A stretch of DNA of 64,000 nucleotides from Parasitella parasitica NRRL 2501. Lineage: Eukaryota > Fungi > Mucoromycota. The notes beneath the pieces are model-generated. The model was not told the DNA's origin and did not search any database. It saw only the letters and a list, made by a program, of their open reading frames with translations. The first letter of the stretch is position 1. Every line of letters starts with the position of its first letter. A program made the translations under genes and the position numbers. Shown one piece after another: positions 2,926 through 43,707 of this stretch. Location: the NCBI GenBank assembly GCA_025201805.1, contig MU619338.1:7894-71893 (forward strand). The letters are read 5' to 3'.

Positions 2926-4245
2926 ATGTCATTTCTTAAAGATAATTCAAAGGGATCATCGCCTTCGATTCCGGCCTGTGACACAATCATTGACTTGACG
3001 TACGTAACTTAATACCACATGCAAAGCATCACCATGACTAATTGATTTCACAGCGCATTAAAAGGCGATGAATTACCAGCCAAAATACTCAAATTGATTC
3101 AAGAGCTTTTCCCGGAATATGCTGAAAATCTCGACAGAATTGAACTGGAAAGAGTTAGCGGGGCTCTCACCAAGTATGTCAAGTATGCAGTGGTGGAGGG
3201 AGTTCATGAATAGTAACACTCTATAGTGCTGTTTTCTTTGTAAAAGCTGCCAAGAGACGTCGCTTATTGTTGAGAGTATACGGTAATGGCGTAGATCAGA
3301 TTATTGACCGAGGAAATGAGTTGGCGTGGCTCGCACGTCTCTCAAGCTTGAGCATTGGTCCTAGCTTACTGGGAGTTTTCGGCAATGGACGGTTTGAAGA
3401 ATACTTGCCGTCAACCACATTAACGCACCATGATATTCGTGATCCTGAGACCTCAAAAGGAATCGCAGCATGTCTGCGTGAATTGCATGATATTGTAAAC
3501 GTTTTTCCATTCTCGGCCGAAAAAAATCATCTGGAAATTTGGGCCAACATTGATAAATGGTATCGTGTTGTGATGGGGCTGTTGCCTGTATTATACAAGA
3601 AGAGCGATGGCTGGGAGAAGGTGTTGGAAGCCTTCAATTTGGAGCTTTTGCCTTTCGAGATTGAAAAGTGCAAGCAAATAACGGAAGCTGCAAAGTCACC
3701 CATAGTGTTTGCACACAACGATGTAACTTTGATCGCAATATATAGTGTTTTGATTTGTACGCTGATACGATTCTCTCTCTCTCCCCTCCCCCCTCCCCCA
3801 AAAAAACATGTAATAGACTCAATACGGCAATATCCTCAAGTTGGAAAATACAAATGAGCTGGTGGTAGTTGATTTCGAGTATGCGGGCTACAATCCTCGT
3901 GGGTTTGATATTGCCAATCATTTCTGTGAATGGACCTATGATTATCACTCTGACCAACCCGCATCCATGGACCTCAGCAAATACCCCTCGCATGACGAAC
4001 AAATTTGCTTCTTGAACGCTTATCTCGACACCAAATCCAAACACGGTAATCTAGACGTTTTAGATAAAGCAGTTACAGTTGAATGCCTACAAAAGGAAGC
4101 TGCCATATGGTTAATGACAAGCCATCTATCTTGGGGTTTGTGGGGTTTGATTCAAGCCAGTCAAAGTGAGATTGATTTCGACTACTTTCTGTTCTCTACA
4201 CAACGTTTGAATGCTTTCCGTCTGGAGTTTGCAAAGTGGAATTAA
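2926..4245 (+). CDS. Choline/ethanolamine kinase (4 exons)
   Basis: VSGALTN, LLRVYG, FGNGRFEEYL, Brenner motif FAHND-TQYGNIL and VVDFEYAGYNPRGFDIANHFCEW. Confidence 0.93.
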
Positions 4246-4384
4246 GTTGTTTTATAGCAGTAATAATGATTGTATGATATATCCAAGGCAGTTTACAGAT
4301 AATGATGTGTATTCAAAACACTTTATTTATGTATATAAAGCAGTATTTTTAAATCTGATCACATTGTCGTCTACGTTACCGAGC

Positions 4385-7300
4385 TTAATCCAATGGCTCA
4401 GATTTCACTTTAACCTCCCTTTTCACAATGGCGCGATCTATAGGCTCAGCCTTGACATTTGCTTCTTCCTTGAACTTGTTGGGAGCAGTATGCTTGGGCT
4501 TTGCTCGTTTAAGCGGTCTCTGATCTGTCAAAGTCGAAGCAGAGACAAATCCACCCCGGTATTTGGCAGAGTGCTGAGATGACGATGACGATGATGAAGG
4601 CTGTGATTGACTTTGCGGCCCTTGGGATTGGGAATAGAAGCCTTGCGATTGCGAATCAGCATACTGAGTGGAATAGCCAGATTGCTTGCCTTTGTCTTTT
4701 TTGGTCACTAATTCATCATCGTCTGGAGGAGCAGGTTTGTCAAGCGTAGCAGCCAACATTGATCTTGTATCGTTATCCCACTCTGGGGGAATAGCCTGGC
4801 GATGCTTTCTGTTCATGTTATCAAAGAAACGAGTCCTAGTTTCCACACGGTATTCACCCCAAGAGTTTCGCTCCTCTGGGCACATACAATAAAGAAAGAA
4901 TTGTGATCGGGTCATGGCGACATATAACAAGCGACCTTCTTCAGACACATCGGAAGATAGTTGGCTTGGAATCGAGCCCTCGTTGCATGTAGCTATGAAC
5001 ACACACGGCCATTCTAAACCTTTGGCAGAATGTATAGTCGATATAGTAACCTTCCCCCCCTCAGCCTCTTCCTGCTCCTTTTGATGCGCGCTCATAGAAC
5101 AATATTCTAGAAACTGTACAATGTAGTCTTTTTCTTTGACCGGGATATCATACTCTTCGCCACTACATGGCTCTCTATTATCAATACCAATTGTAACAGT
5201 CGTTCATGTAAACTTACTTACTCTTTGTTGGGAATTTCTGTATCGTTGGAAGCCCTAGGACCAGCTGAGCTTCCATCGTGTCCTCTTTTTTAATAACAGA
5301 ATAGCGTAAGTATCGCATAAAATAAACGTAAAAAGATACGAGTCTTACGTATTTTGTGGAAGGTTAAAAGAATCCTTTGGCTGTCTATGAAAACCATTGT
5401 TATCGCATGTCATGCAGACAATCAAAGTATTCTTACTGCTCTGAAATGTCTACCAAATCCACTTCTTCATCCATTGTAAAGTCAGGAATACCCTCGTCAG
5501 CTGTAAAGTGCGGCACCTCTTCACTCTCATTAGCTAGCATTTGCTCGTCTTATCAATAACTAGCAATACAGCGCATGTCGTGATTTACCTTCATTATCCT
5601 CGTCTTCGTCTTCTGCAACTACTTCAGCATCTACAACATCCAAACTGTTGTGATTTGCATTTTGGCCTTGCTGTGTTTGAGATTGGCTTATAATAGGGTC
5701 ATCATCGCCTACGTGATGCTCTTCTTTCGATAGTGATATAAGTTCGCCAAGATTATTGTATCTAGCTTCATGATCTTGGAAATATTTGTCTTTTAAATAC
5801 TCCTTGTATTCGGTTGCAGTAATAATAAACTCTAGAATCTCTGAAATTTCAATCTAGAATTATCGTAGTTTGTGAACATTTAGTTTTACGCATATGTATA
5901 TATTTCAAGCTACCTTTTGTTCGATCATGGTCTTTACATCTTCGCATATCATTGCTAGCCCTCTGATCTTTAGGCGAATAGCGTTGTTGAACGCTCCTCT
6001 GTTCCTTCCAATAGCATGTAATGTTTCCAACATGCTTTCGTTCGGATGTGTTTCATGAAGAACAGCAATCTTCTTTATTGTAACTTCGCCAATTCCTCTT
6101 TTGGGTACATTGATGATGCGGCTATAGCTTTGATAGTCAAAGTTGTTGTATGAAAAAGCGAGGTATGCTAGCATGTCTTTGATCTCAATTCTGTCGAAAA
6201 ACCTATCGCCGCAAATCTACATTTTATACAGCAAGGCAAGTAAACAGCGTTAATCGTCAATTTCAATGACGAACGTAAAAAAAAAAAAAGTATATACTTG
6301 CAATGCTAAAAGGGATCCGCAGCTTTCTAAACGTCGCTTCAAACTTTCTTGAAGTGAAATTACTACGCATCAGAACTGCAAAATCTTTAAAGGAGACAAG
6401 TCCTTTGGAATATTTGATAACTTTTTTGATCTCTTTAGCCACAAACTCTGCCTGCGTATCCTCGTTTCTCGTTGACAAGATAGAGATGGGGATGCCCACG
6501 GGATTGTTGGTGTACAAAGACTTGTCAATACGTGTGACATCTAGTTAGTCTTGCTGGATCAGGCAGTGCTCCACGGCGAATACACTTAAGAAGTTAAGCA
6601 CTCACCTTGCTTGATAACATGCAATGCAGCGTCCAAGATGGCCTTTGTACTTCTGTAGTTTTGCTCCATGTTAATTGATTGAGTATCCAGATAATCATCT
6701 TGCATCTTGTTAAAGTTCTTGGGCTCAGCTGATCTCCAGCCAAAGATCGACTGATCAGGATCTGTTTAGCATGCATAAAAGTCAGACACTAAAATCGTCT
6801 ATTCGACGGTTTACTCTACCTCCAACGATGGTTACAGTTTTATCGGTATGCTGATTCTTGGTTATAAGCTTGATTAGATCGTACTGAACAACATTCGTAT
6901 CTTGATACTAATGGAAACAATGTTATACAATGTAAGGCTATCAGATGCGAAAGTGCTTTATACCTCGTCCACAAGCACAGCTTTAATATGAGCCAATACA
7001 TCCCTCTTTCTTCTAAACAGTTCGCATGCTTTGATTAAAATGTTGTCAAAATCCTAACCAAATTGAGAAAAACTTGATTAAAAACACTATGTATATTGGC
7101 TTCCATCCGGGTACTCACAACCAAATTATTATTGTAAAGCTCTTGTTCGTATGCCTCATACAAAACTGCAATGTTTCTTTTTGCGAAATCTTCAGAATAC
7201 ATTTCCTTGTATTGTGATGCTGTGATTCCTTCGCTCTTTGCTTTGCTAATTATGTTGGAGATAACCCCTAGTAAACACATTCCACATAAATAATCACTGC

Positions 7301-10074: not shown

Positions 10075-12240
10075 ATGAGTGACCAGCCCTCACAGTCTAG
10101 AGACAGCTCCAGTAACAGAGCGCCATCTGTGGAGATTCTCTCTAAATATCCAATCTTTTCAAATACGTTGGATGTGTGGAAGGCTATCAAAGAGCTGGAG
10201 GAAGACGATTTTCAAGATGACAACATTGATATCGATTTTGAGGAAGATCAGGCCTCAAGCATGAGTTTTCAAGAGGTGAGTGCAGTCATTAAAAGCAGAC
10301 AATCAAAAAGAGCCACATTAATCTCGAATGAGCAGCATCATAGCAATAGCGCCACAGTGGAAACGTCAGCGAGAGACGAGATTACCGTCGACGAGATGGA
10401 GAATCGCCAGCGATTGTCTAGTGCAAATCGGCAGGAAGAGGACGGACCCATGACACATCATGTAAATTGCCTCAGCCATACCGTCTCATAAGCACTGCCT
10501 ATACTAACATGTTTCTTACAGTCTCCAATTCGAGCTGCTCAAACGGAATACACATTGTAAGTCTTTTACATTGGGATATTCAGCAGCTATTAACAGACAG
10601 TCAAGTCCTAGAAATGTGCGTAGGAAACTAGCCGATGCAGCATCCAGTCCTTCATCCGCACCAGCATCCACAAATAGAGACTCGCCGATGACACGGCCTT
10701 CACCACCATCAGCTTTGACTACCTCCAATATAAGCATGATGGCTACGCCTACAGACCTACCTTCTTCACCCTCCACTGGAAGCATTGAAGGTAAATTAAA
10801 AAAAAAAAAAAATGGGGCCCCATAACCATCTTGGAAAACAAGACGTATTTAAACATTCATAGGACCATTTGATAATGCCAATGACGCTGGCAGTCTTGAG
10901 CGCAATGTTTCTTCGTTAGACATAGCCGTCGATAGTCCTTCAACGGTAATAATATCATGCAGCTAAAAGGCAATCATATACTCATATACGGCTGTAGAAA
11001 GAGTCGCCTTCATCGAAATCGGATAGTAAAAGAAGAGCATCCCCACCTCGACAGCAGCATACGCCTCCCATCGTCACCAGAACATCTTCAGAGTCACCAC
11101 GGCCACGGCCTGAGCAGTCGAGACCAGTGGATCATTTTGCGAAACCTGCAATCATCCCAAAGAAATCCAACGGAAACTACTCGAACCACTCGTACACAAA
11201 TTATGATCGCAAAGTACCACAGGCTCCTCGTGAACAAGAGAAAATAACTGTACGTAGGACCTAGTGTAGACGCATTCTTTATTAAACCACAATTATACGT
11301 GTATATATAGATCAACAAGCACGATTATACCATTTTAAAGGAGATTGGCAGAGGAAGCTCTGGCAAAGTATTTCAGGTTCTGGGGCACACATTTGGTCAG
11401 ATATTAGCTCTCAAATGGATCGAAGTGAAACACGAGGAAGATCGCAAAAGTATTATGAACGAAATAGAGTTGCTGAAATCGCTGGATGACCACGACACCA
11501 TTGTAAGTTTACTGGATTACAGAGCAACCCCTTCTGTCATTTTCATGGTGATGGAATTTGGCGAAATCGACCTTGCTCAATTGATACAAAGGCAGGCTCA
11601 AAAGAAATGGGACATCAACTTTATTAGGTATTACTGGAACCAGGTAAGACAACAAAGAGAGAGAGAGAGACAGAGAGAGAGCTGAGGCTGTGGTAGCGTT
11701 GCACTCTAACACATTTCTTAGATGTTGCATGCTGTGTACATTATCCACCAGAACAACATTGTTCATTCGGATCTAAAGCCTGCTAATTTTGTGGTGGTGA
11801 AAGGATGGCTCAAATTGATTGACTTTGGCATAGCAAAGAAAGTGTCTGATGATACGACGAATATCGAGCGGGTGGTTCAAGTGGGTACTATCAACTACAT
11901 GTCGCCCGAAGCATTATTAGATATCAACGAGGGGAGAGGAGAAGCAGGCAGCTTGATGAAGCTAGGTAGACCTAGCGATGTGTGGTCTCTAGGCTGTATT
12001 TTATATCAAATGGTATATGGCAAGACTCCCTTTTATCATTTATCACTAGCACAGAAAATCATCTGCATACCTAATCCTAGCTACAAGATTAATTTTCCAA
12101 CGACTGTGCCGAATGGAAAGAATTCAAGACCCATTGAAGTGCCTCCTTTGCTTCTCAAAGTATTGAAAGGCTGCTTAAATCGCAACCCCTCCGTGCGCCC
12201 ACTCCTCACTGAATTGATGTTTCACCCATTTGTAAATTAG
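10075..12240 (+). CDS. MPS1: Mps1/TTK-family protein kinase
   Basis: IGRGSSGKV, MVMEFGEIDL, FIRYYWNQML, HSDLKPANF, DFGIAK, QVGTINYMSPEAL and SDVWSLGCILYQMVYGKTPF; long Ser/Pro-rich N-terminus. Confidence 0.9.
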
Positions 12241-13177
12241 CTCTCATTGTACATTTTTTTTTCGCTCTTTTTCCCCCAGATTATACACGTATTTAAAAAA
12301 AAAACAAAAACAAAAACAAACAAACATACTTATTTACGTATATTTTGCTTGATTTAAAAAGTGTCTTTTTTTTTTTTTTGACAGTGTCCTAATGCATATA
12401 GCACAAAAGAAAAAAAAACTTACTTTCAAGATTATGTATGCTTATAACTAATATTTGGTTTTCTGCCTGACCTGTGCATAGTTCCACTATTGACATGTAT
12501 AGAATCGTTTTCTCTATTCAATGGACGAAATAAAATAAAAAAAAAAAACAAGACTTCAGTACAAAAGTTTCGTCATTGATTTCTTTCTGAGTTTTGGTCG
12601 AGAGATGGTTCAAAACGTCCATTGTATTCATTTGAGTTTCAAGACGTTGCATGCTCATACCAGGTAAATCTGGAGAATGACAACTGCTCCCTTCGACTTA
12701 CCCTCCAAGGCATTTTGATAATTTTGTTTTGCACATTTTCTTTGAATGCTTTTTTAGTTTTTTCCTTTTGATATCATTTTACAAGAAGATCAGGAGAGAG
12801 GAAAAAACATAGGAGAAGAAACTATACCAAAATCAGGAAAAGCAAGGTTATGTTTTACCCGAACACGGAACAAAAAAGGTACCCCACTACTATACGAACC
12901 AATAAATGCATATAACTGAACTGAATTATAACTTTTATCAGCTAAACCCAATTATTGAAAGCATGCAAGGAGGCTTAAAAAAACGCATGCGTTAATAAAC
13001 AAGTTTCGGATGTTGTCATACACATGGTGATCCTTCTGTTTCTGCAAGAAATTCGAAATTAAATGATTAATAAAGATAAAATATACAAATATGGCATGGA
13101 ATACAGAATAATTTTCAAAAGATGAGATGATTTATTATGAATTATAAACGGGAAATGTAATATGTCGTGAGTGTCGA

Positions 13178-35220: not shown

Positions 35221-35605
35221 TATACCCCTTATATATCTTATCCTATCTGAATACCCATGTACGTTATACCATACATATATAGTGTGCTGCCTATTCTACA
35301 TGGCTTGTTATAATTATAACGCAACTTTTGTATTACATTTTATAATTTTTTTTGCCAAGTAGTCTAGTATCGTACTTTTGGTTGTCCATGGCAGAAATCC
35401 TTATTAGGAACAAGCTTGCTGTGAAAAAAGACAGTAAAGATCGTCAATGATACGGCATTGTATGGAAGGAGCGGTATGCGCCACTTTGAGAACAGTGAGC
35501 TGACATACTATATGCAGTAGGGCACAAACACATGATAAAAAAAGCAATTTCTTAAAGTATCTATTACAGTATTGCTATTTTATTGTTTTAATGTATCATT
35601 GCGCG

Positions 35606-37753
35606 CTAAACATGCGCAGCAGCTCGCCATGCTTTCTCTAATTGAAACAACTCGTTTGCATACTCAGGGCTTGGCAAAGAAGTAGATTGCCAATCTGATT
35701 CTAAAAAGCTGCTGGCACGACCATGAACCTGCGATTCCATCTTTACCAGCTCAGATATAAAACCAATATTAGGAGACATATTAGGCCTTGCCCTAATAAC
35801 ATGGCGGTATGCCTTCTTGAGCGTCCATCGTTCCGAAGTAACCAAGTAGGCCAATATAGCTGTAATAGAGCGGGATTTTCCCGCTTTGCAATGTACATAA
35901 ATTGGCTCGTGGTTCTTTTTTGCCTCCTCTAAAATGGAATAGAATGACTTGAGACTTTATTACTATGAGGCTGCAGATGACTTACCTATAAACTGTACTG
36001 CTTCCATCATGACAAGTTCAATGTTTTTCATTTCCAACGTATCACGAGCAGCGATTTTGTGATAATGGACAGTGTAGCTGCTCAAACCTTCATCTTGACA
36101 TTCTTCAGCCATGTTCAGTACGCGTTTGATTCGTCGTTCTTGTATTAACTGCTTTGCTTGTTCGGTAGTTTCAATTTCAGGGCCTACGAATAAAAAGCTT
36201 GGAATGATTTCTGAAATGTTGAAACCAAAATCTGATTCCGTAAGAGGAGAGAAATCTGCTGTCATAACCTCATCGTCTTCTGTAACACGGTTTAACAAAG
36301 CATTGTTTGAGAGGGCACAATCGTTGGCAGTAGGATTATCACTGCTGACAGCAGTAGCAGCAGGAGGAATCGAGGCGGTATCTTGTGGTTGATGTTGAGA
36401 TCTTCTTTCAGCTCTTCGCGCTAGCGCATTTGCATTATTCACACGAGCAGCTTGCGTATCTAAACTGAATAGACTTGTCCGTCTATTAAAATCAATTTTG
36501 GATTCTCCAATGGTATAACTGATAGATCGTTTCGGTATAATATTCTGCTTCGTATTAGCAGCGCCAGCACTACTAGATAAAGGCATATTTGAGGGCAGAG
36601 AAGACTGCTGCGATTGAGGAATCTCGAGCCAATTTTCATGCTGAAGAAATGATTGAAAACCGCCAACTAGATAATATAGTTTGCCTGGGTTTTTTTGATC
36701 GGTTCCAATGTGTCTTTCCAATACATTTAGTAGAGTCCAAGCTTGAGATGTCTGATCGTCTTCTGACATTTCATCATCGTATACAATCCAGACTGTCTTT
36801 TTCTTCTTCTTCTTTTGCTCTGCTTCCACAGCTTTTTGCTCCAGAACTGTCGAAAATTTCTGTGTCAAATGTTGCTTTTTTGAAAGATAGATATCTCGGC
36901 CCTCTGGGGTTGTGATGAAGTTTTGCAGGTTAAAGTTTGCAACCGACCCCCGTTGATATCTCTTGATGAGTAGAGATGGCAAATTAACATTTAACGATCC
37001 TCGGATATGGCATTTCTGATACTCCATGATATTTCGAACGTCAATTAACGTCACCAAATAGCCCTGGCCCAGCTGTTCAGCAGTAAGAAGCTCAATCAGT
37101 TCGTTTGGCTCAATTGGATCTGCTCTTCTTTCCATGGCTTTAAAATGAGACTCAGAATGCGTGCGATTGAGCTTTTGATGAGGTTTTTTTGGAGGAGCTT
37201 GCAAATGCTGGTGACTGATGGATCGATGTGGAACGAGTAAAGGAGGCTGTGCGGTTCCTAATTGAGCCAACAACGCTTTGGTATTATCCTCCAAACCAAT
37301 TAACTTATCCAACTTTGCTAACTGGACAGCAGTTAAACATAGCTCAGCAGTTGTAATATTATTAGGCTTATCGGATGGAAAATGTCCAAATGTGAACGAA
37401 TGTCTATTTACATCCTGAGCAGAGACTAGATGATGGTGCCTTTTGCGGTGTTCTGCTGAATGTCGTTTTCTTTGTCTTGCCATATAAACACTGTCTTTTT
37501 GAGGTGCAGGAAGGGAAGGAGGAGACACTGGGTATTGTGGAAAAGGAGGCTCACTCAGTTCAAGAGTTGCGATATTTGGTAATGACATTGATGGCCTAGG
37601 TTGATTTACAATGTTCACAGTTTCATCTTGTTTTTTCCACTTTTTGGATGAAGTTAGGTTAATTGGGAATCTCTTCAAAATGCTCTTTGCTAAGCTTGAT
37701 TTCTTTTTGTCGTTTGTCGAAGCTGGCTTCCCTCTGTATCTATCAAACAGCAT
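35606..37753 (-). CDS. Dual-specificity (MAP kinase) phosphatase with N-terminal rhodanese domain
   Basis: LIDVRNIMEYQKCHIRGSLNV..LLIKR rhodanese domain; catalytic VHCKAGKSRS, AYLV and SPNIGF; 2 exons. Confidence 0.92.
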
Positions 37754-38493
37754 TTTTGAAGAAAAGAATAAAAAAAAAAAAAAGAAAGGCAAAAGAGAAA
37801 CTGTGCAACTGTACGGATGGTTTACTTTTTGATGATGATAATTTCTTTGTGAGACTTGCAGAATGGCCAAAAGATTTTAAATTTAAATTTGTCTCCTTTG
37901 GTTCTGAGGAAATTTACCTTTTCGTCATGAAAGGAAAATGAGAAAGGAGGTATCGCCTTTTCTTCCTTTCCTCAATTCGATTCCCTAAACCAAACAATTA
38001 CATGCTAATACGTCTCCAATTTTATCCCATCAGAAACCACTGCTTCCTCTGCAACATGAAGGCATCCCCTGGCAAAGAAGATTGTAAAAGATTAAGCAAA
38101 ACATGTTCATTTTTTATTGATTTGATATTTCGTGTAACTTGCCCCTGTACTAAAAAAGTACAGTCAGTACGGTCGGTTCGCAAAATAACAATTGGCTGTT
38201 ACAAAAATAGTAATTGTCGGTTGGTGAAACGTATAAAATCGGTCATTGAAAACAATTTCTTGAAAAAGACAAAATTTCATTTGCCGGTTAGTGTGTGGTT
38301 TCAAAATACAGATGAGTATGGCCTTAATTTGTATGACGTCACACTATTTTTTGCATTCGCCTGATTCACGTAAGATTGTTTCTTGCTATTTCAAGGTATG
38401 TTTAACATTAACAGCTCACATCCCGTTCTTTATCAACCCATTTTATTATTCTAATATATAGAAGCCATCAAAAGTGAATTATGTTTTCAGGTT

Positions 38494-39905
38494 TCGAATA
38501 GGTGGGTTCATGTACATATCTTTATTCGCATAACTGATGTTGCACTGGTATCCACTGCAATAAAGTATAGCCTGAAGGCTTCTTTGAAGCAGCTTCAGCG
38601 CGGAAGTCAAACTAAGGGACCAGCTCCAGAACCCTGTTAGGCTGATATGTATTTGGTCAGAATTCACTTGGCTGGTCGTCCAGTCAAGGACATGTCGATT
38701 GGATACTGCACTGTGAAAGGTGCAGCCCGATGTGTGAACGCCCACGAAGCTGGTAGTCGTGGCAGCCCATAAAAATATACAGTTCTTATTCGCGCAAGGA
38801 CCCATGGCGGTTGGTATAACGCTCGAAGGTGCTATTTACATATTTTTAGATCATTGCTCTTTACTAGACCATTGGCGTACTTCAATTTAGATTTGAATAA
38901 AGGGAAGTACACCTTAAAGCAAGGTCACAAACAATCAAAATGTTCTATCAATCGCATTCTCTGGTCTCGAATAGCTGGGTTCATGTACATATCTTCAACC
39001 GCATAACTGATGTTGCACTGGGATCCACTGCAATAAAGTATAGCCTGAAGGCTTCTTTGAAGCAGCTTCAGCGCGGAAGTCAAACTAAGGGACCAGCTCC
39101 AGAACCCTGTTAGGCTGATATGTATTTGGTCAGAATTCACTTGGCTGGTCGTCCAGTCAAGGACATGTCGATTGGATACTGCACTGTGAAAGGTGCAGCC
39201 CGATGTGTGAACGCCCACGAAGCTGGTAGTCGTGGCAGCCCATGAACTCAGTCAATCTATATATTTTTATGTACATATCTTCAACCGCATAACTGATGTT
39301 GCATTGGTATCCACTGCAATAAAGTATAGCCTGAAGGCTTCTTTGGAGCAGCTTCAGCGCGGAAGTCAAATTAAGGGACCAGCTCTAGAACCCTGTTAGG
39401 CTGATGTGTATTTGGTCAGAATTCGCTTGGCTGGTCGTCCAGTCAAGGACATGTCGATTGGATACTGCACTGTGAAAGGTGCAGCCCGATGTGTGAACGC
39501 CCACGAAGCTGGTAGTCGTGGCAGCCCATAAAAATATACAGTTGAACTTTCTTTTTACAGAGTTGCAGTTGGTTGAACTGATTGCTTGGATGTGTTCTTG
39601 TGATAACACTAAATAATTGATCGGGCTGATGGCTTTTTTTTTTCATGATAGGCGTAAATGCAGGCTTTCAAGAACTACCAGAAGATACTAAACTAATACC
39701 TGCCCTTCGGGGATGCATCTTGTGTACATTGGCGCAGGATGTCGTATGATCTCCAGCTGCGAAGTGGAAACACCACACTGCTCTTAGCTGGCCTCTGTTT
39801 TTTTTTTTATCAACAATCGTATTGAGTTTTCCTGAACTTGCTGTTTGGTTGTCACTTTTACCGTATCAAGGCAGATCATCTGGAGTTAGATCAAGCAGGA
39901 ATTTT
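38494..39905 (+). ncRNA. Putative structured non-coding RNA locus (family not recognised)
   Basis: Dense hand-identified helices, G-U pairs favouring the + strand, different closing stems on different copies, UUCG and GAAA tetraloops, and a T11 run. No transcription evidence is available. Confidence 0.5.
38510..39529 (+). repeat. Three near-identical 261-bp direct repeats (38510-38770, 38983-39243, 39269-39529)
   Basis: Direct comparison: each copy runs ATGTACATATC...GGCAGCCCAT with few substitutions, separated by unrelated spacers. Confidence 0.97.
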
Positions 39906-40746
39906 GACAATGCTGGTACTGGCCTGGGTTGGTAGGATAATCAGTGTTCCCTTAGTCCCTTTTCCTTGATCGTTTACTTCTGGATTACCCTTTGCTATTA
40001 TCTCGTTAGATAGGAGTTAATACCTACAAGACACTCCTACAAGATTAGCAACAATTGAGAATAATAAACGATCATCATTATTGCTCTTTTTTAGAATAGA
40101 TTTATAACAGCAAAAAATTATGTTGTTGGTCCCTGACTCCAGGTTTAATTATTCGAAAACTCCACTTGTGGTGTTCTTGATTTGTTTATAGTTCAGTGCA
40201 CTATTCGATGTAACAACTGTAAAAACCAGATTGGGAGATAAATGCAGGGTTTGTATAAACAAAAGATTTCCCATAAATTTGGAGTAGAGTTAACAAATAA
40301 TACATACACAATGCACAAAAACGAAGTGCACCGCAAGCAAGCAAGTCTGCTCAAAGAAGAAAAATACACAACTTTGTAAAAGAAGGGTTGAACTTAATCC
40401 ATGGCACAACTATTTGATAATAGGGATAAAATGTGGAGAACATGCCTAATTAAATAAAGTTCCATAATTGTAAAGGCTTTTGCTTTCTATTAGAGGAGAT
40501 ACGCTCAAAATTGTTGCTTCAGAACTCTGTTGATTAGACTTTATTATCAAAGCGGTTTGTAAGGTGCCAAACATTAAAATGAAGGGATCTATTGTTATTT
40601 AGTATAATGTAATGAGAATGGTATTTTTTGGTGACGAATATCTTGATATTTTTGGTTTGAAGAGTAACGACATGAAAAAACATGTTAATATTATATTTGT
40701 TTTGCATAAAAGGCCGGCTTGTTCTTGTCAACGTCTTGAAACTTAT

Positions 40747-43305
40747 TTACTCTTCTTTCTGCGGAGAGCGGAAGCTAACTAGTGATCGGCTGAGTCGACG
40801 GCTAGGGGAAGCTGCATCTTGTTCTGGCAGTATACACGATAGGTCATCCAACATCTTATCCGTAGTTTTCTTCATAATTCTCTAATGAGGATATAGTTCA
40901 GTAATGAATAAAGAAGAAAAGAAAGCAAATATCACACAAACCTCTAGCGTATCCATCCTACGGACGCAAGGGATAAGAGCGTGGATATCATACAAATCGC
41001 GTGGCAAGTAGAATTGCTCCAACATAGTGAAACGGTAAAGTTTGTAAAATGAGAGGTCCATAACAAATAACTGGCATTTGAAACCTAAATCAAAGACCGC
41101 AGCAGTTAACATTATACTCCTTGGATAAGACCGTATTTCATAAATACCTTCAATCAACAGACCGTAAATAACTCTGTCTTCAGTAAAATGCATGCGATCT
41201 AATTCATCTTTCATTATATTCGCCAATTTTACGAAATCTGGATTTTGGGCATCAGTTGTTGAATTCAAACTTTGAATATGACTTGGACTTTTGACCTCGC
41301 AAACAAACGGCAAGGCTGTGTGGCCGTTGTACTGTACAAGAAGTGATAGATCGGGTATACGCCCGTACTTGCCTCTTCGCTCTTTCGAGCCCAACGATTC
41401 ATCGGTGCTTCTATTAAGCGTTCAAGTGTCAGTTAGAAAAGTGAATCCATCCTCTGTCCATCAGGCCATTGGGGAAGATCAATGCCATACAATTCTGTAG
41501 CTAGCATTGCCATTTTAGTTTTCTTGTTTTTAAAATAGTTTTTTTTTTTTTTCTCTTATCTCACTAACTTCTTTATTGTTCTTATCATTATTATTTATAT
41601 CTATAACATTATATTTTATCTCAATTGCACCCGCCTCTTCGATAGGAACTCATATCCTATAGTACGCGGCTCAATCAATAAACACAATTTAAAAAAAAAA
41701 AAAAGAAAAGTGAATCCTACCCGTGCAAACATGATTCAACGCTTACCCTTGAATAATGATGTCGGTGCCATTTGAGCACAAAAATGGACATACCAAGCTT
41801 TCAACTAGTAGACTGCAGAACAGTGGCTCCTTCAACGTATACATGTTGTGTTTCTTTAGTTTTTGTATCCTACACGATAAACGTGTTACAAGTCATGATA
41901 TATTAAAGTTACTTACGTTTACATATTAGACTTACATATCAAATGTTGTGTTTGCTCTTAATAGTTCCTTAGTATATCCTTTGTTTGCGCACTCTGCCTG
42001 GTGTTTTACTGCTTGACTCTCTCCCTCCTTCACATCGTTTGTCATAATGATCTAAAAACAAGTTAGTCAACACCAACAGCTTGGTATATAGAGAACTAGC
42101 GATTGTTACCTCTGAAATGATTGAAATGTCTTTGTATTCGCTTGGCTTGTCTTTGTCTTTATACTTGTCTTTGATGTCACGGTGGTAAATGCTCCAGTTC
42201 TCTTCAGATATCTTATAAGCTCTTCTATTTTTGTCGTCAACCCACATAATCGCGTTCAAAGCACTACAAGTAGTAAATAATGGCTATTAGTCAACTGTGT
42301 TGTTACTGTTGTGGCGGGCACAAATATTTACAGCTCTTCTATGTGTGTTGGGCTCTTGATAGTATTAGATATTTTGTCAATGCAAAGATTGCGGTAGGCA
42401 TGGAAGCTTTTCGAAATATTCTCTTCGTTAACACACCACTAGTCAAAAGAAAAAGATTAGCCATGTCAAATGCTAATATTTCAGCTGCATGAGATTTACA
42501 TTGTTTGTTGCATTGTCAATTATTACTTTAGGTTCACCACCTTCCAAATAGTCCAAGTACTTTATATTTAGAGCCTGCAAAGTAACTTTGTGAGAATGAC
42601 AAATATACATTGCACTCCAGAAGATAGCATACTTACAGGTGGTGGTGCACCTTCTTCTTCTAAACTGCTATCCGTATCGGTGGTGCTATCTACGATTTTT
42701 CTTTTTTTGCCACCTTCTCGTGTTCAAATAGTTAATGCTCAGTAATATTTGTTTTCAAAATACAACTATACTTACTGTTGCTGCTCTCACTAAAGGTGCT
42801 GGTGCTGGCGCTAGGACTAGCAACATTTTTGATATTATTTTTCTGTTGGGTAATGTCTCCATTGTACGTGAAATTATTCGTAGAGCCTTTTATTGTATTT
42901 GTTATTCGCTATTTGAACAGTTTAGTACGCGCTTGTTGCAAGTGCAGGAGGGGAAAGACTTACTTCTGAGGAGGAAATGGACCCTGCTGGCCTGCTTTGT
43001 TGTTGGTTATCTTTCAGTTCTTTACTTTTACTGTCATATACTGGAATCTGTGACTAATGGAACCTGTAAGTATGAGCTTATTTGATTTTTGAGTTTTTTT
43101 GTGAGTAACATACATCGAATTTCTTCAAAAAAGATTTCATTATTTTTGATGCTTTGCCATTTAATAAATCACTCTGGACCAATTCGTTTAATTCGGATTT
43201 TAGCGTGGACTGAGCAGTGAGATTATTATCGCACTTCTCTTTATAACGAGAGTACAGTTGACTGAGATTCCACTTCTTGACTTTTGTCTTAACTAGGTAG
43301 TCCAT
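40747..43305 (-). CDS. Mucorales multicopy-family protein with C-terminal PD-(D/E)XK restriction-endonuclease-like domain (multi-exon)
   Basis: GRIPDLSL...FVCEVKSP...DFVKLANIMKDELD...YGLLIEG-FKCQLFVMDL...FYLPRD and a terminal FRSP. Middle exon structure is not fully resolved. Confidence 0.65.
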
Positions 43306-43707
43306 GTTTTTTTTTGGTCAAGTCGAAAAAAAAAAAAAAAAAAAAGAAAAAAAGCACATCGAATCCATGCAAATTTATACTAGTTTGTCTGTGTGTGTGT
43401 GTGTATAAAAATAGCCCTGTTCAGCAGTTGTAAACTGGTTTTAGCCAGATGATTTTGATCAACGGATATGTAATGCATATCGTTAAACATAGTAGTGCAG
43501 TAATAAATGCATTTTCTGCTTTTGATCCTTTGTCGCATATCACAATTTATTGCCATACTGCAAATAGCTGGCGACATTTATACGTGTAAATACTATTAAT
43601 CCCAACACATGAACTAATCTATTATACAAATTCCCAGCTGCAGTTTATTCTGACTATAAATACTATTTTTCAAGCAAAAAAGATGTATAAAAAGATATAT
43701 GATACAT

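What the first reader, a model, noticed from the sequence alone, without database searches (positions are those of the whole stretch)
38510..39545. Triplicated 261-nt core that folds as a complex RNA, with different closing stems on different copies: candidate novel ncRNA, ribozyme or RNA-based element
SEEN: three near-identical cores (A 38510-38770, B 38983-39243, C 39269-39529). Copy B is closed by CTGGGTTCATG (38975-85) / CATGAACTCAG (39241-51), 11 bp with one G-U. Copy C is closed by an unrelated stem, TATATTTTTATG (39260-71) / CATAAAAATATA (39527-38), extendable to ~18 bp (TCAA.CT / AG.TTGA). The flank sequence thus changed completely while pairing was kept. Internal helices (copy B): TACATATC 38986-93 / GATATGTA 39117-24; CCGC/GCGG; TTGCA.TGG/CCA.TGCAA; CTGAAG-GCTTC/GAAGC-CTTCAG; CTAAGGG/CCC..TTAG; TTCAC 39136-40 / GTGAA 39207-11; GTCC/GGAC; ATTGG..CTGCAC/GTGCAG.CCGAT; CCACGA/TCGTGG. 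Of six C-specific substitutions, four turn Watson-Crick pairs into G-U on the + strand and two fall at unpaired sites; the B-specific change lies in a loop. INFERENCE: selection on a + strand RNA structure, though the substitution evidence is modest because there are few sites. I could not match it to snRNAs, SRP, RNase P/MRP, 5S, group I/II cores, TPP riboswitch or hammerhead consensus.
Basis: partly seen in the sequence, partly recalled or inferred. Interest (0 to 1): 0.9.

Follow-up and report, generated by a model that had tools for sequence, protein, structure and literature searches.

The report
Conserved two-module folded RNA in moulds
The repeated 261-base units are real and belong to a previously undescribed folded non-coding RNA, kept as a clamped tandem pair in at least four lineages of mucoralean moulds. 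It travels with a small, patchily distributed gene, so it is a good candidate for a new functional RNA.

Summary

- **In this genome.** The window comes from Parasitella parasitica. The 261-nt core occurs only here, three times, and matches no Rfam family or protein.
- **Relatives.** Homologues of a neighbouring small gene led me to the same RNA in Pilaira anomala, Mucor hiemalis and a metagenome contig. Where the contig is complete it is always a tandem pair with the same 285-286-nt period as copies B and C.
- **Covariation.** In 8 sequences, 16 of 67 base pairs keep pairing through changes on both sides, against 5.6 in shuffles and 1-3 in slid controls. 97% of cells are paired.
- **Strand.** 56 G-U cells make the + strand the RNA strand (97.6% canonical, against 88.5% on the minus strand).
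- **Helices.** Both unit-specific closing helices and a loop-loop contact covary between genera.
- **Not coding.** No reading frame is conserved.
- **Expression.** RNA-type contigs cover 38340-40372 without splicing.
- **Copy A.** It is a Parasitella-specific extra copy without a clamp.

The RNA-plus-gene block sits in a different chromosomal context in each lineage. Function is unknown. My best guess is a partner or regulator RNA of the neighbouring gene. The scan has noted look-alike architectures, but not this family, elsewhere in this genome.

The parts
38340..40372 (+). Transcribed region holding the three cores. The strand is inferred, not read directly.
   Evidence: In run X7 depth is about 0 at 37788-38339. 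Contigs are then continuous at depth 136-288 (771 on the collapsed core) up to 40372, with no joints inside. X7 behaves as RNA because it shows spliced joints in neighbouring genes. The + strand follows from the G-U asymmetry.
38510..38770 (+). Copy A. This is an extra, Parasitella-specific copy carrying B's 5' flank (26 nt, 85% identical) and C's 3' flank (14 nt, identical). It has no closing helix.
   Evidence: Pilaira and M. hiemalis have only two units.
38951..38968 (+). 5' arm of a tentative outer helix that would enclose the whole dimer. It pairs with 39560-39577.
   Evidence: RNAalifold on the three-species dimer alignment A5 gives 12 pairs, 2 of them with changes on both sides. With only 3 sequences this is tentative.
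38975..38985 (+). 5' arm of clamp 1. It pairs with 39241-39251.
   Evidence: 11 bp with one G-U. In Pilaira and M. hiemalis a U-A pair becomes C-G, a G-U becomes G-C, and one mismatch appears.
38983..39243 (+). Unit 1 (copy B) of the conserved dimer.
   Evidence: Orthologous to Pilaira L027 4527-4787 (-) and M. hiemalis L028 12163-12423 (-).
39092..39097 (+). Loop of domain 1 that pairs with the loop at 39222-39227 (kissing contact). The same contact is present in A and C.
   Evidence: A G-C pair in Parasitella is A-U in Pilaira, M. hiemalis and the metagenome copy. M. hiemalis also has one U-G.
39222..39227 (+). Loop of the last hairpin of domain 2, partner of 39092-39097.
39244..39268 (+). 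25-nt spacer that supplies the 3' arm of clamp 1 and the 5' arm of clamp 2.
   Evidence: The spacer length gives a period of 286 nt in Parasitella, 286 in Pilaira and 285 in M. hiemalis.
39269..39529 (+). Unit 2 (copy C) of the conserved dimer.
   Evidence: Orthologous to L027 4252-4501 (-) and L028 11878-12138 (-).
39250..39271 (+). 5' arm of clamp 2. It pairs with 39527-39548.
   Evidence: 12 perfect A-U pairs plus an extension (I5). Three of the pairs are G-C on both sides in M. hiemalis and Pilaira.
39527..39548 (+). 3' arm of clamp 2.
39560..39577 (+). 3' arm of the tentative outer helix.
39702..40017 (.). Interspersed ~316-nt element inserted downstream of the RNA. It is not part of the RNA.
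   Evidence: It has 7 copies in the genome at 69-80% identity. It is absent at the orthologous site of the 85%-identical relative L023/L024.
40512..42564 (-). Neighbouring small gene (ORF 40885-41394 plus upstream exons), convergent with the RNA.
   Evidence: It has a minus-strand intron at 40882-40941. Homologues are P0088-P0096. It is collinear with M. hiemalis. Its profile resembles the rotavirus VP3 2'-5' phosphodiesterase domain, E 2.2e-5.
41035..41102 (+). GT..AG intron of a + strand transcript running antisense through the gene's conserved exon.
   Evidence: Seen as a joint in RNA run X7. It removes the conserved segment FKCQLFVMDLS of the minus-strand frame.

Best explanation
The 261-nt core is one module of a previously undescribed, evolutionarily conserved, structured non-coding RNA read from the + strand.

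**Architecture.** The ancestral form is a tandem dimer: unit 1 (copy B), a 25-nt spacer, then unit 2 (copy C).
- Each unit folds into two multi-helix domains joined by a conserved single-stranded linker.
- The two domains are tied together by a loop-loop contact.
- Each unit is closed by its own flanking helix.
- The whole pair may be enclosed by a further outer helix.

**Copy history.** Units within a genome are homogenised by gene conversion. Copy A is a recent Parasitella-only extra copy without a clamp.

**Expression and linkage.** The RNA is transcribed as part of an unspliced transcript of about 2 kb. It is inherited, and apparently relocates, together with a small fast-evolving gene, towards which it is usually transcribed convergently.

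**Shown:** sequence and structure conservation, the strand, transcription, absence of coding potential, and linkage to the gene.

**Inferred:** that the RNA acts with or on the neighbouring gene, as a cis-antisense regulator or as an RNA partner or antidote. I put this at about 0.45. The clamps most plausibly insulate each module so that it folds independently within the longer transcript.

The confidence given (0.85) is for the conserved structured RNA itself, not for the functional link.
For: **Homologues.** The RNA is found in Pilaira anomala (L027), Mucor hiemalis (L028), a metagenome contig (L030) and a ~85%-identical relative (L023/L024, where the contig ends inside the core).

**Dimer conservation.** The period is 286/286/285 nt and the flanks are conserved.

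**Covariation.**
- A6 (7 sequences): 83 pairs, 14 compensatory, 97.6% of cells paired, score 0.235 against 0.158 in shuffles (0 of 500).
- A8 (8 sequences): 16 of 67 pairs compensatory against 5.6 +/- 1.7 in shuffles (0 of 500). Slid controls give 1-3.
- Structure-guided domain 1 alignment: 13 of 49 pairs compensatory.

**Strand.** 56 G-U cells give 97.6% canonical pairs on the + strand and 88.5% on the minus strand.

**Clamps and loop contact.** Both covary between genera.

**Constraint.** The core is 74-84% identical between genera. The adjacent gene's exons are only 65-67% identical, and the rest of the intergenic DNA does not align.

**Not coding.** Every frame has at least 2 stops in the other species.

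**Transcription.**

**No known family.** No Rfam family matches. No protein homologue was found apart from one weak hit that I judge to be chance.

**Linkage.** The gene lies within 0.7-5.3 kb of the RNA in all five loci where the core was found. It is convergent in Parasitella, M. hiemalis and L030. The surrounding genes differ in every lineage.
Against: - There are only four independent lineages, and within-genome copies are not independent. No R-scape-type phylogeny-aware test could be run.
- Consensus structures were derived from the same sequences that were then counted.
- The strand of the transcript was not read directly, because only unstranded contigs were available.
- RNA depth on the A-B spacer (288) equals the per-copy core depth (~257). 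There is therefore no sign of a processed, stable 261-nt species in that library.
- Folding energy alone is only about 2 sd better than shuffles.
- The link to the gene is not universal. Paralogues or homologues in L020, L021, L022, L029 and L032 have no such RNA nearby. In Pilaira the RNA lies about 3.9 kb beyond the last block that aligns with the window's gene region (5.2 kb upstream of the annotated gene) and points away, which excludes antisense overlap there.
- The gene's fold and activity are unresolved.
Confidence: 0.85

Rival explanations
1. The repeat is a young, neutral tandem triplication inside a lineage-specific, incidentally transcribed intergenic insert. On this view the clamps are by-products of one inverted-junction rearrangement and the core has no function.
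For: - Only three copies exist, all at one locus.
- The locus is absent from the syntenic site in another Parasitella assembly and in two Mucor species.
- The B-C spacer equals the reverse complement of the 3' flank plus the 5' flank.
- Copy A has no clamp.
- Fold z-scores are near -2 on both strands.
- All transitions are strand-biased even at unpaired sites.
Against: - The dimer, its spacer length and its flanks are conserved in three further lineages, with compensatory changes in the internal helices, both clamps and a loop-loop contact.
- The core is better conserved than the adjacent coding exons.
Confidence: 0.04
2. The RNA is an autonomous structured ncRNA gene whose function has nothing to do with the neighbouring gene. 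On this view the linkage is only shared descent of a small chromosomal block.
For: - Structure conservation is independent of the gene.
- In Pilaira the RNA lies about 3.9 kb beyond the last block that aligns with the window's gene region (5.2 kb upstream of the annotated gene) and is divergent.
- Several homologues and paralogues of the gene lack the RNA.
- An earlier follow-up on a look-alike family in this genome (s1-724688) reached the same conclusion for its neighbouring nuclease-like gene (not tested here).
Against: - The RNA and gene stay within 0.7-5.3 kb in all five loci where the RNA was found, although the surrounding genes differ in every lineage.
- The convergent orientation is kept in three lineages.
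- A + strand spliced transcript crosses the gene's conserved exon.
Confidence: 0.35
3. Each unit is a self-processing RNA (ribozyme). Units would be cut out of the multimeric transcript at the clamp boundaries, as in satellite or retrozyme-type RNAs.
For: - The arrangement is head-to-tail units with a conserved period, and each unit is closed by a helix that brings its ends together.
- There is a conserved loop-loop contact, and conserved single-stranded segments.
Against: - No hit to any self-cleaving ribozyme or intron family in Rfam at E up to 1.
- The spacer and flanks are covered in RNA contigs at the same depth as each core.
- There is one chromosomal locus per genome, with no sign of an episomal or multicopy form.
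Confidence: 0.07
4. The core is a protein-coding exon or domain repeat. The minus-strand frame is open through copies A and B, and it is 87 codons long, the size of an fn3-like domain.
For: - The frame is open in A and B (108-aa and 97-aa ORFs).
- The length is a multiple of three.
- There is one weak HMMER hit (E 7.7e-5) to a bacterial protein with repeated Ig/fn3-like modules.
Against: - Copy C has a stop codon in that frame.
- The 25-nt spacer breaks the frame.
- Every frame has 2-9 stops in Pilaira, M. hiemalis and the metagenome copy.
- There is no Pfam match and no k-mer homologue.
- The single hit sums three repeats at 23-29% identity.
Confidence: 0.01

Closest known systems
Large orphan structured ncRNAs found by comparative genomics (bacterial OLE, GOLLD, ROOL and HEARO classes). 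From my own knowledge.
   Same: It is a multi-helix RNA of several hundred nucleotides, recognised only by conservation and covariation. Its biochemical function is unknown at discovery. It is sometimes tied to a mobile-element gene, as HEARO proved to be the RNA partner of IscB.
   Different: It is eukaryotic (Mucorales). It is built as a tandem pair of near-identical modules, each with its own clamp. No sequence or model similarity to any Rfam family was found.
Bacterial type I toxin-antitoxin pairs with convergent, 3'-overlapping antisense RNAs (txpA/RatA, bsrG/SR4). From my own knowledge.
   Same: A structured RNA gene is transcribed convergently towards a small, patchily distributed gene. 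A + strand transcript crosses the gene's conserved exon in antisense.
   Different: Continuity between the folded RNA and the antisense transcript is not shown. In Pilaira the RNA is divergent and about 3.9 kb beyond the last block that aligns with the window's gene region (5.2 kb upstream of the annotated gene). Toxicity of the gene is unknown. The RNA is far larger and its own fold is conserved.
Type III toxin-antitoxin RNA arrays (ToxI of ToxIN). From my own knowledge.
   Same: Tandem repeats of a folded RNA unit lie next to a small gene that may act on RNA.
   Different: ToxI units are 36 nt, lie upstream on the same strand, and are cut by the toxin. Here the units are 261 nt, usually convergent, and no processing is visible.
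Long non-coding RNAs built of repeated modules (NORAD, Xist A-repeats). From my own knowledge.
   Same: It is an unspliced transcript of about 2 kb carrying repeated structured units that could act as a multivalent platform.
   Different: Those modules are short or poorly structured and are not clamped individually. This RNA shows dense covariation and a tertiary contact.
Other tandem 'clamped' structured units noted by this scan in the same genome (s1-724688, 239-nt units; s1-715779, 293-nt element; s1-781485, ~180-195-nt modules)
   Same: The architecture is the same as described there: near-identical tandem units, each closed by a different flanking helix, near small nuclease-like genes. 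I saw one such array myself at L022 2975-3695.
   Different: There is no sequence or covariance-model similarity to the core studied here. Those notes are unchecked by me.

Membership tests
Any Rfam 15 family (snRNAs, SRP, RNase P/MRP, snoRNAs, group I/II introns, self-cleaving ribozymes, riboswitches) | A covariance-model match at or near the family's gathering score | tested here: not met
   There is no hit on the cores at E up to 1 in window 36000-42000. There is none on the Pilaira, M. hiemalis or metagenome homologues at E up to 0.5.
Interspersed mobile element (MITE, SINE or solo LTR) | Many dispersed copies, with terminal inverted repeats or target-site duplications | tested here: not met
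   Only the three tandem copies exist in 33 Mb. The flanks are inverted rather than direct repeats and differ between units. The 5.4-kb insert has no terminal inverted repeats.
Protein-coding exon | A reading frame conserved between species | tested here: not met
   Every frame has at least 2 stops in the other three lineages.
Conserved structured ncRNA (generic definition) | Base pairs maintained through compensatory changes more often than in controls | tested here: met
   16 of 67 pairs are compensatory, against 5.6 +/- 1.7 in shuffles and 1-3 in slid controls, with 97.4% of cells paired.
Conserved structured ncRNA (generic definition) | Expression from the strand that carries the structure | tested here: inconclusive
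   The locus is covered by RNA-type contigs, but contigs carry no strand. The + strand is inferred from the G-U asymmetry.
Type I toxin-antitoxin-like antisense pair | The RNA overlaps the partner mRNA in antisense | tested here: inconclusive
   The orientation is convergent in 3 of 4 lineages. A + strand GT..AG intron lies inside the gene's exon. Depth drops to 28 between 40372 and 40512, and Pilaira is divergent.
Type I toxin-antitoxin-like antisense pair | The partner gene encodes a toxic product | not testable with these tools
   The gene has no Pfam family. The structural model has low confidence and gives no fold match.
Type III toxin-antitoxin RNA array | Short repeats upstream of an endoribonuclease toxin gene, on the same strand, and processed by that toxin | tested here: not met
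   The units are 261 nt and lie on the opposite strand to the gene. The spacer is covered as deeply as the units.
omega-RNA of TnpB/Fanzor/IscB-type nucleases | The RNA overlaps or abuts the 3' end of a RuvC-type nuclease gene on the same strand, at a transposon end | tested here: not met
   The neighbour is a protein of about 170-240 aa without RuvC or any Pfam domain. The RNA is on the opposite strand, 0.7-5.3 kb away.
2H phosphoesterase (for the neighbouring protein) | Two conserved H-x-T/S-x motifs | tested here: not met
   The profile matches the rotavirus VP3 phosphodiesterase domain (5af2_A, E 2.2e-5). The catalytic His positions align one residue off, and the T/S is replaced.
PD-(D/E)xK nuclease (for the neighbouring protein) | A restriction-endonuclease-like fold with D...(D/E)xK in the core strands | tested here: inconclusive
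   The motif GRIPD...CEVK is conserved. Only 1 of 10 members touches VRR_NUC, at E 0.02. The model (pLDDT 65) finds no fold match.

The most novel reading that the evidence does not exclude
The clamped two-module RNA and the neighbouring small gene form a eukaryotic RNA-protein selfish module. The block relocates between chromosomal sites, perhaps even between Mucorales species by way of Parasitella's fusion parasitism. The folded RNA would be the gene's antidote, controller or cofactor. This kind of pairing is so far known from bacterial toxin-antitoxin and transposon-nuclease systems, not from fungi.
Probability: 0.3. Interest if true: 0.9.

Novelty: categorically new. Interest (0 to 1): 0.75.

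Why it matters
Very few large structured non-coding RNAs of unknown function are known from fungi, and I know of none with this architecture. Here there is a folded RNA of about 630 nt with dense covariation, a tertiary loop-loop contact, and an unusual design of two near-identical modules, each with its own clamp. It is conserved across genera of early-diverging moulds and is better conserved than the protein gene it travels with.

This gives RNA biologists a defined object for structure probing and genetics. If the link to the neighbouring gene is functional, it would extend the bacterial theme of an RNA partner for a mobile gene to eukaryotes.

The result also shows that similar 'clamped tandem unit' loci noted elsewhere in this genome deserve the same comparative test.

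Tried and rejected
**Searches for relatives that found nothing**
- Direct searches for relatives of the core. The open minus-strand frame was used as a protein handle against metagenome, viral and prokaryotic contigs.
- Exact 20-22-mers against metagenome and viral contigs.
- k-mer protein search.
- Syntenic loci of the phosphatase gene in another Parasitella assembly, M. velutinosus and M. plumbeus do not hold the RNA.
- No K-like RNA lies near the gene's paralogues or more distant homologues: L020, L021, L022, L029, L031, L032.
- No local target complementary to the conserved linker exists in the window.
- Literature searches found nothing on such an RNA.

**Weak or uninformative results**
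- An exhaustive HMMER search gave one weak repeat-summed hit, which I judge to be chance.
- Fold search of the neighbour protein gave a low-confidence model and no match.

**Hypotheses tested and dropped**
- The core as an intron: the cores are retained at full depth in RNA contigs.
- The 5.4-kb insert as an element bounded by terminal inverted repeats: no such repeats.
- The adjacent 316-nt element as a partner RNA of the neighbour gene: its six other copies have no homologue of that gene within 1.5 kb, and it is an insertion absent from L023.

**Technical notes**
- Two nhmmer runs failed silently on a format option and were redone.
- Read laying was given 5,500 letters.
Full report
**1. The observation**

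The window holds three copies of a 261-nt core at 38510-38770 (A), 38983-39243 (B) and 39269-39529 (C).
- They differ at ten positions: 14, 16 and 17 in A; 40 in B; and 36, 78, 103, 118, 138 and 157 in C. None of the differences falls in the last 104 nt.
- A and B share 26 nt of 5' flank at 85% identity. A and C share 14 nt of 3' flank. Beyond that the flanks are unrelated.
- B is closed by an 11-bp helix and C by a 12-bp helix that extends to 22 nt at 82% complementarity. A has no closing helix above background.
- The 33-Mb assembly has no further copy, by BLAST or by three covariance models.
- DNA contigs of independent runs stop exactly one k-mer away from the copy-specific variants, so the three copies are real.

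**2. First-pass tests, which looked unpromising**

- No Rfam family matches.
- Folding energies are only about two standard deviations better than shuffles. The whole core gives -1.96 on the + strand and -1.82 on the minus strand. The two halves on the + strand give -2.53 and -1.85, and the neighbouring spacers give +1.2 and +0.8.
- A minus-strand frame is open through A and B but is stopped in C. It has no Pfam family and no homologue, apart from one weak repeat-summed hit that I regard as chance.
- All eight transitions among the copies are C>T or A>G on the + strand. No predicted pair is broken (p about 0.005 against random substitutions). The same bias holds at unpaired sites, so structural selection and a strand-biased mutation process cannot be separated with these data.
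- The 25-nt B-C spacer is the reverse complement of the 3' flank (about 19 nt) joined to the 5' flank (8 nt). Within this genome, the two different clamps could therefore come from a single rearrangement.

**3. Context**

- The organism is Parasitella parasitica. The neighbouring phosphatase is 100% identical to a protein of that species.
- The cores lie in a 5.4-kb stretch (38152-43545) between a dual-specificity phosphatase gene and eIF4E. This stretch has no counterpart at the syntenic site of a second Parasitella assembly (84% identical in the gene), of Mucor velutinosus or of M. plumbeus.
- The stretch also holds two interspersed repeats, at 39702-40017 (7 copies) and 41423-41705 (at least 20 copies), and a small minus-strand gene.
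- Run X7 behaves as RNA: it has spliced joints in the neighbours and depth near 0 at 37788-38339. It covers 38340-40372 continuously and without joints. Depth is 136-154 on the flanks, 288 on the A-B spacer and 771 on the collapsed core, about 257 per copy.
- The locus is therefore transcribed as a long unspliced RNA. That library shows no enrichment of a unit-length species.

**4. The turning point**

Earlier notes of this scan describe other tandem 'clamped' units near small nuclease-like genes in this genome. That led me to use the neighbouring gene (ORF 40885-41394, minus strand) as a handle.

Its few homologues led to loci that do contain the core.

| Lineage | Locus | Units found | Position relative to the gene |
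|---|---|---|---|
| Pilaira anomala | L027 | two: 4527-4787 and 4252-4501 | about 3.9 kb beyond the last block that aligns with the window's gene region (5.2 kb upstream of the annotated gene), pointing away |
| Mucor hiemalis | L028 | two: 12163-12423 and 11878-12138 | about 1.4 kb from the gene, convergent |
| Metagenome contig | L030 | one: 3135-3399, cut by the contig end | 1.8 kb from the gene, convergent |
| ~85%-identical relative | L023/L024 | contigs end inside the core | not determined |

- The period is 286 nt in Parasitella (B to C), 286 in Pilaira and 285 in M. hiemalis. The leader, the spacer and about 70 nt of tail align across the three genera.
- The B-C dimer is therefore ancestral, and copy A is a Parasitella-specific addition.
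- Within-genome units are 94-98.5% identical, while orthologous units are 71-89% identical. The units are thus homogenised within each genome.

**5. Structure**

- On seven units with flanks, RNAalifold gives 83 pairs, 14 of them with changes on both sides. 97.6% of cells are paired, and the covariation score is 0.235 against 0.158 in shuffles (0 of 500). Slid controls give 29-41% pairing and 0-2 compensatory pairs.
- Adding the metagenome copy gives 16 compensatory pairs out of 67, against 5.6 +/- 1.7 in shuffles (0 of 500).
- A structure-guided alignment of domain 1 gives 13 of 49, including 6 of 13 in the variable hairpin.
- The same helices read on the minus strand are only 88.5% canonical, because 56 cells are G-U on the + strand. 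One G-U is invariant in all sequences. This points to an RNA on the + strand and argues against a DNA-level palindrome.
- Clamp 2 is twelve A-U pairs in Parasitella. In M. hiemalis and Pilaira three of its pairs are G-C on both sides.
- Clamp 1 shows one U-A to C-G exchange, one G-U to G-C change and one new mismatch.
- The loop at core positions 110-115 pairs with the loop at 240-245. The G-C pair of Parasitella is A-U in all three other lineages. This confirms a separate first-reader note.
- The three-species dimer alignment also predicts an outer helix (38951-38968 with 39560-39577) with two compensatory pairs. With only three sequences this is tentative.
- No reading frame survives in the other species, and Rfam finds nothing on the homologues.

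**6. The neighbour and the block**

- The RNA is 74-84% identical between genera. The neighbouring gene's exons are 65-67% identical and its protein about 52%.
- RNA and gene are collinear and convergent in Parasitella, M. hiemalis and L030. In Pilaira the RNA is on the other side and divergent.
- The surrounding genes differ in every lineage:
  - phosphatase and eIF4E in Parasitella;
  - a G-patch gene in L023;
  - Rpc82 and coatomer E in M. hiemalis;
  - a desaturase-like gene and Ssu72 in Pilaira.
- The block has therefore relocated, or been transferred, repeatedly.
- The protein family has no Pfam domain. It carries a conserved GRIPD...CEVK motif. Its profile matches the rotavirus VP3 2'-5' phosphodiesterase domain at E 2.2e-5, but without aligned H-x-T/S motifs. 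A 10-sequence AlphaFold model (pLDDT 65) finds no fold match.
- In the RNA contigs a GT..AG intron on the + strand (41035-41102) removes a conserved coding segment of the minus-strand gene. An antisense transcript therefore crosses the gene. Whether it is the continuation of the folded RNA's transcript is not shown.
- Homologues or paralogues of the gene in L020, L021, L022, L029 and L032 have no such RNA nearby.

**7. Reading**

- Shown: a conserved, structured, non-coding, transcribed RNA of a family absent from Rfam. It is built as a clamped tandem dimer, sits on the + strand, and is linked to a patchy small gene.
- Inferred: the clamps insulate the two modules within a longer transcript. 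The RNA works with or on the neighbouring gene, either through cis-antisense control where the two are convergent or as a trans-acting partner. I put about 0.45 on a functional link, 0.35 on an unrelated autonomous RNA, and below 0.1 on self-processing.
- The neutral-duplication and coding readings are excluded by sections 4 and 5.

**8. Limits**

- Only four lineages were available.
- Structures were derived from the sequences that were then counted.
- One alignment was fitted to a model.
- There is no stranded read evidence.
- No whole-genome search of other fungi was possible with the tools at hand.

Noticed in passing
window 39702-40017: An interspersed element of about 316 nt. It has 7 copies in the genome at 69-80% identity, an internal T-run and a CCUUCGGGG hairpin. 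Paralogous copies are expressed, and no Rfam family matches. It is absent at the orthologous site of relative L023/L024, so it is a mobile insertion.
   Followed up: partly
window 41423-41705: An element of about 283 nt with at least 20 copies at up to 99% identity (DNA depth about 25x). It is inserted just upstream of the neighbouring gene's ORF start and is absent in L023/L024. It may split that gene's N-terminal coding region.
   Followed up: partly
window 40512-42564 (-), ORF 40885-41394: A small, patchily distributed gene family (Parasitella, Pilaira, M. hiemalis, a few metagenome and Logan contigs). Its profile resembles the C-terminal 2'-5' phosphodiesterase domain of rotavirus VP3 (E 2.2e-5), but the catalytic His-x-Thr/Ser motifs are not aligned.
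   Followed up: partly
window 41035-41102: A GT..AG intron on the + strand inside the conserved exon of the minus-strand gene. The same RNA contig also carries a minus-strand intron (40882-40941). Both strands are therefore transcribed here.
   Followed up: partly
L011 compared with window 35604-38152: Two assemblies labelled Parasitella parasitica are only 84% identical at the nucleotide level in a conserved phosphatase gene. They are probably different species-level lineages.
   Followed up: no
L022 2975-3695 (G000 contig C16): Three tandem copies of an unrelated unit of about 194-212 nt lie 3.6 kb upstream of a distant paralogue (30% identity) of the neighbouring gene. This may be one of the other 'clamped unit' families noted by the scan.
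   Followed up: no
window 40033-40145 (-): A weak U4 snRNA-like match of 21 bits, against a gathering score of 46 (E 0.12). It is probably chance.
   Followed up: no
window 38335-38342: A palindromic TGACGTCA (CRE-like) site sits right at the left edge of the transcribed region that holds the cores.
   Followed up: no
run X10 over window 36500-41999: This run shows about 312 C>T and 313 G>A differences and nothing else, so it is bisulfite-converted DNA. This explains why it shares no k-mers with the window.
   Followed up: no
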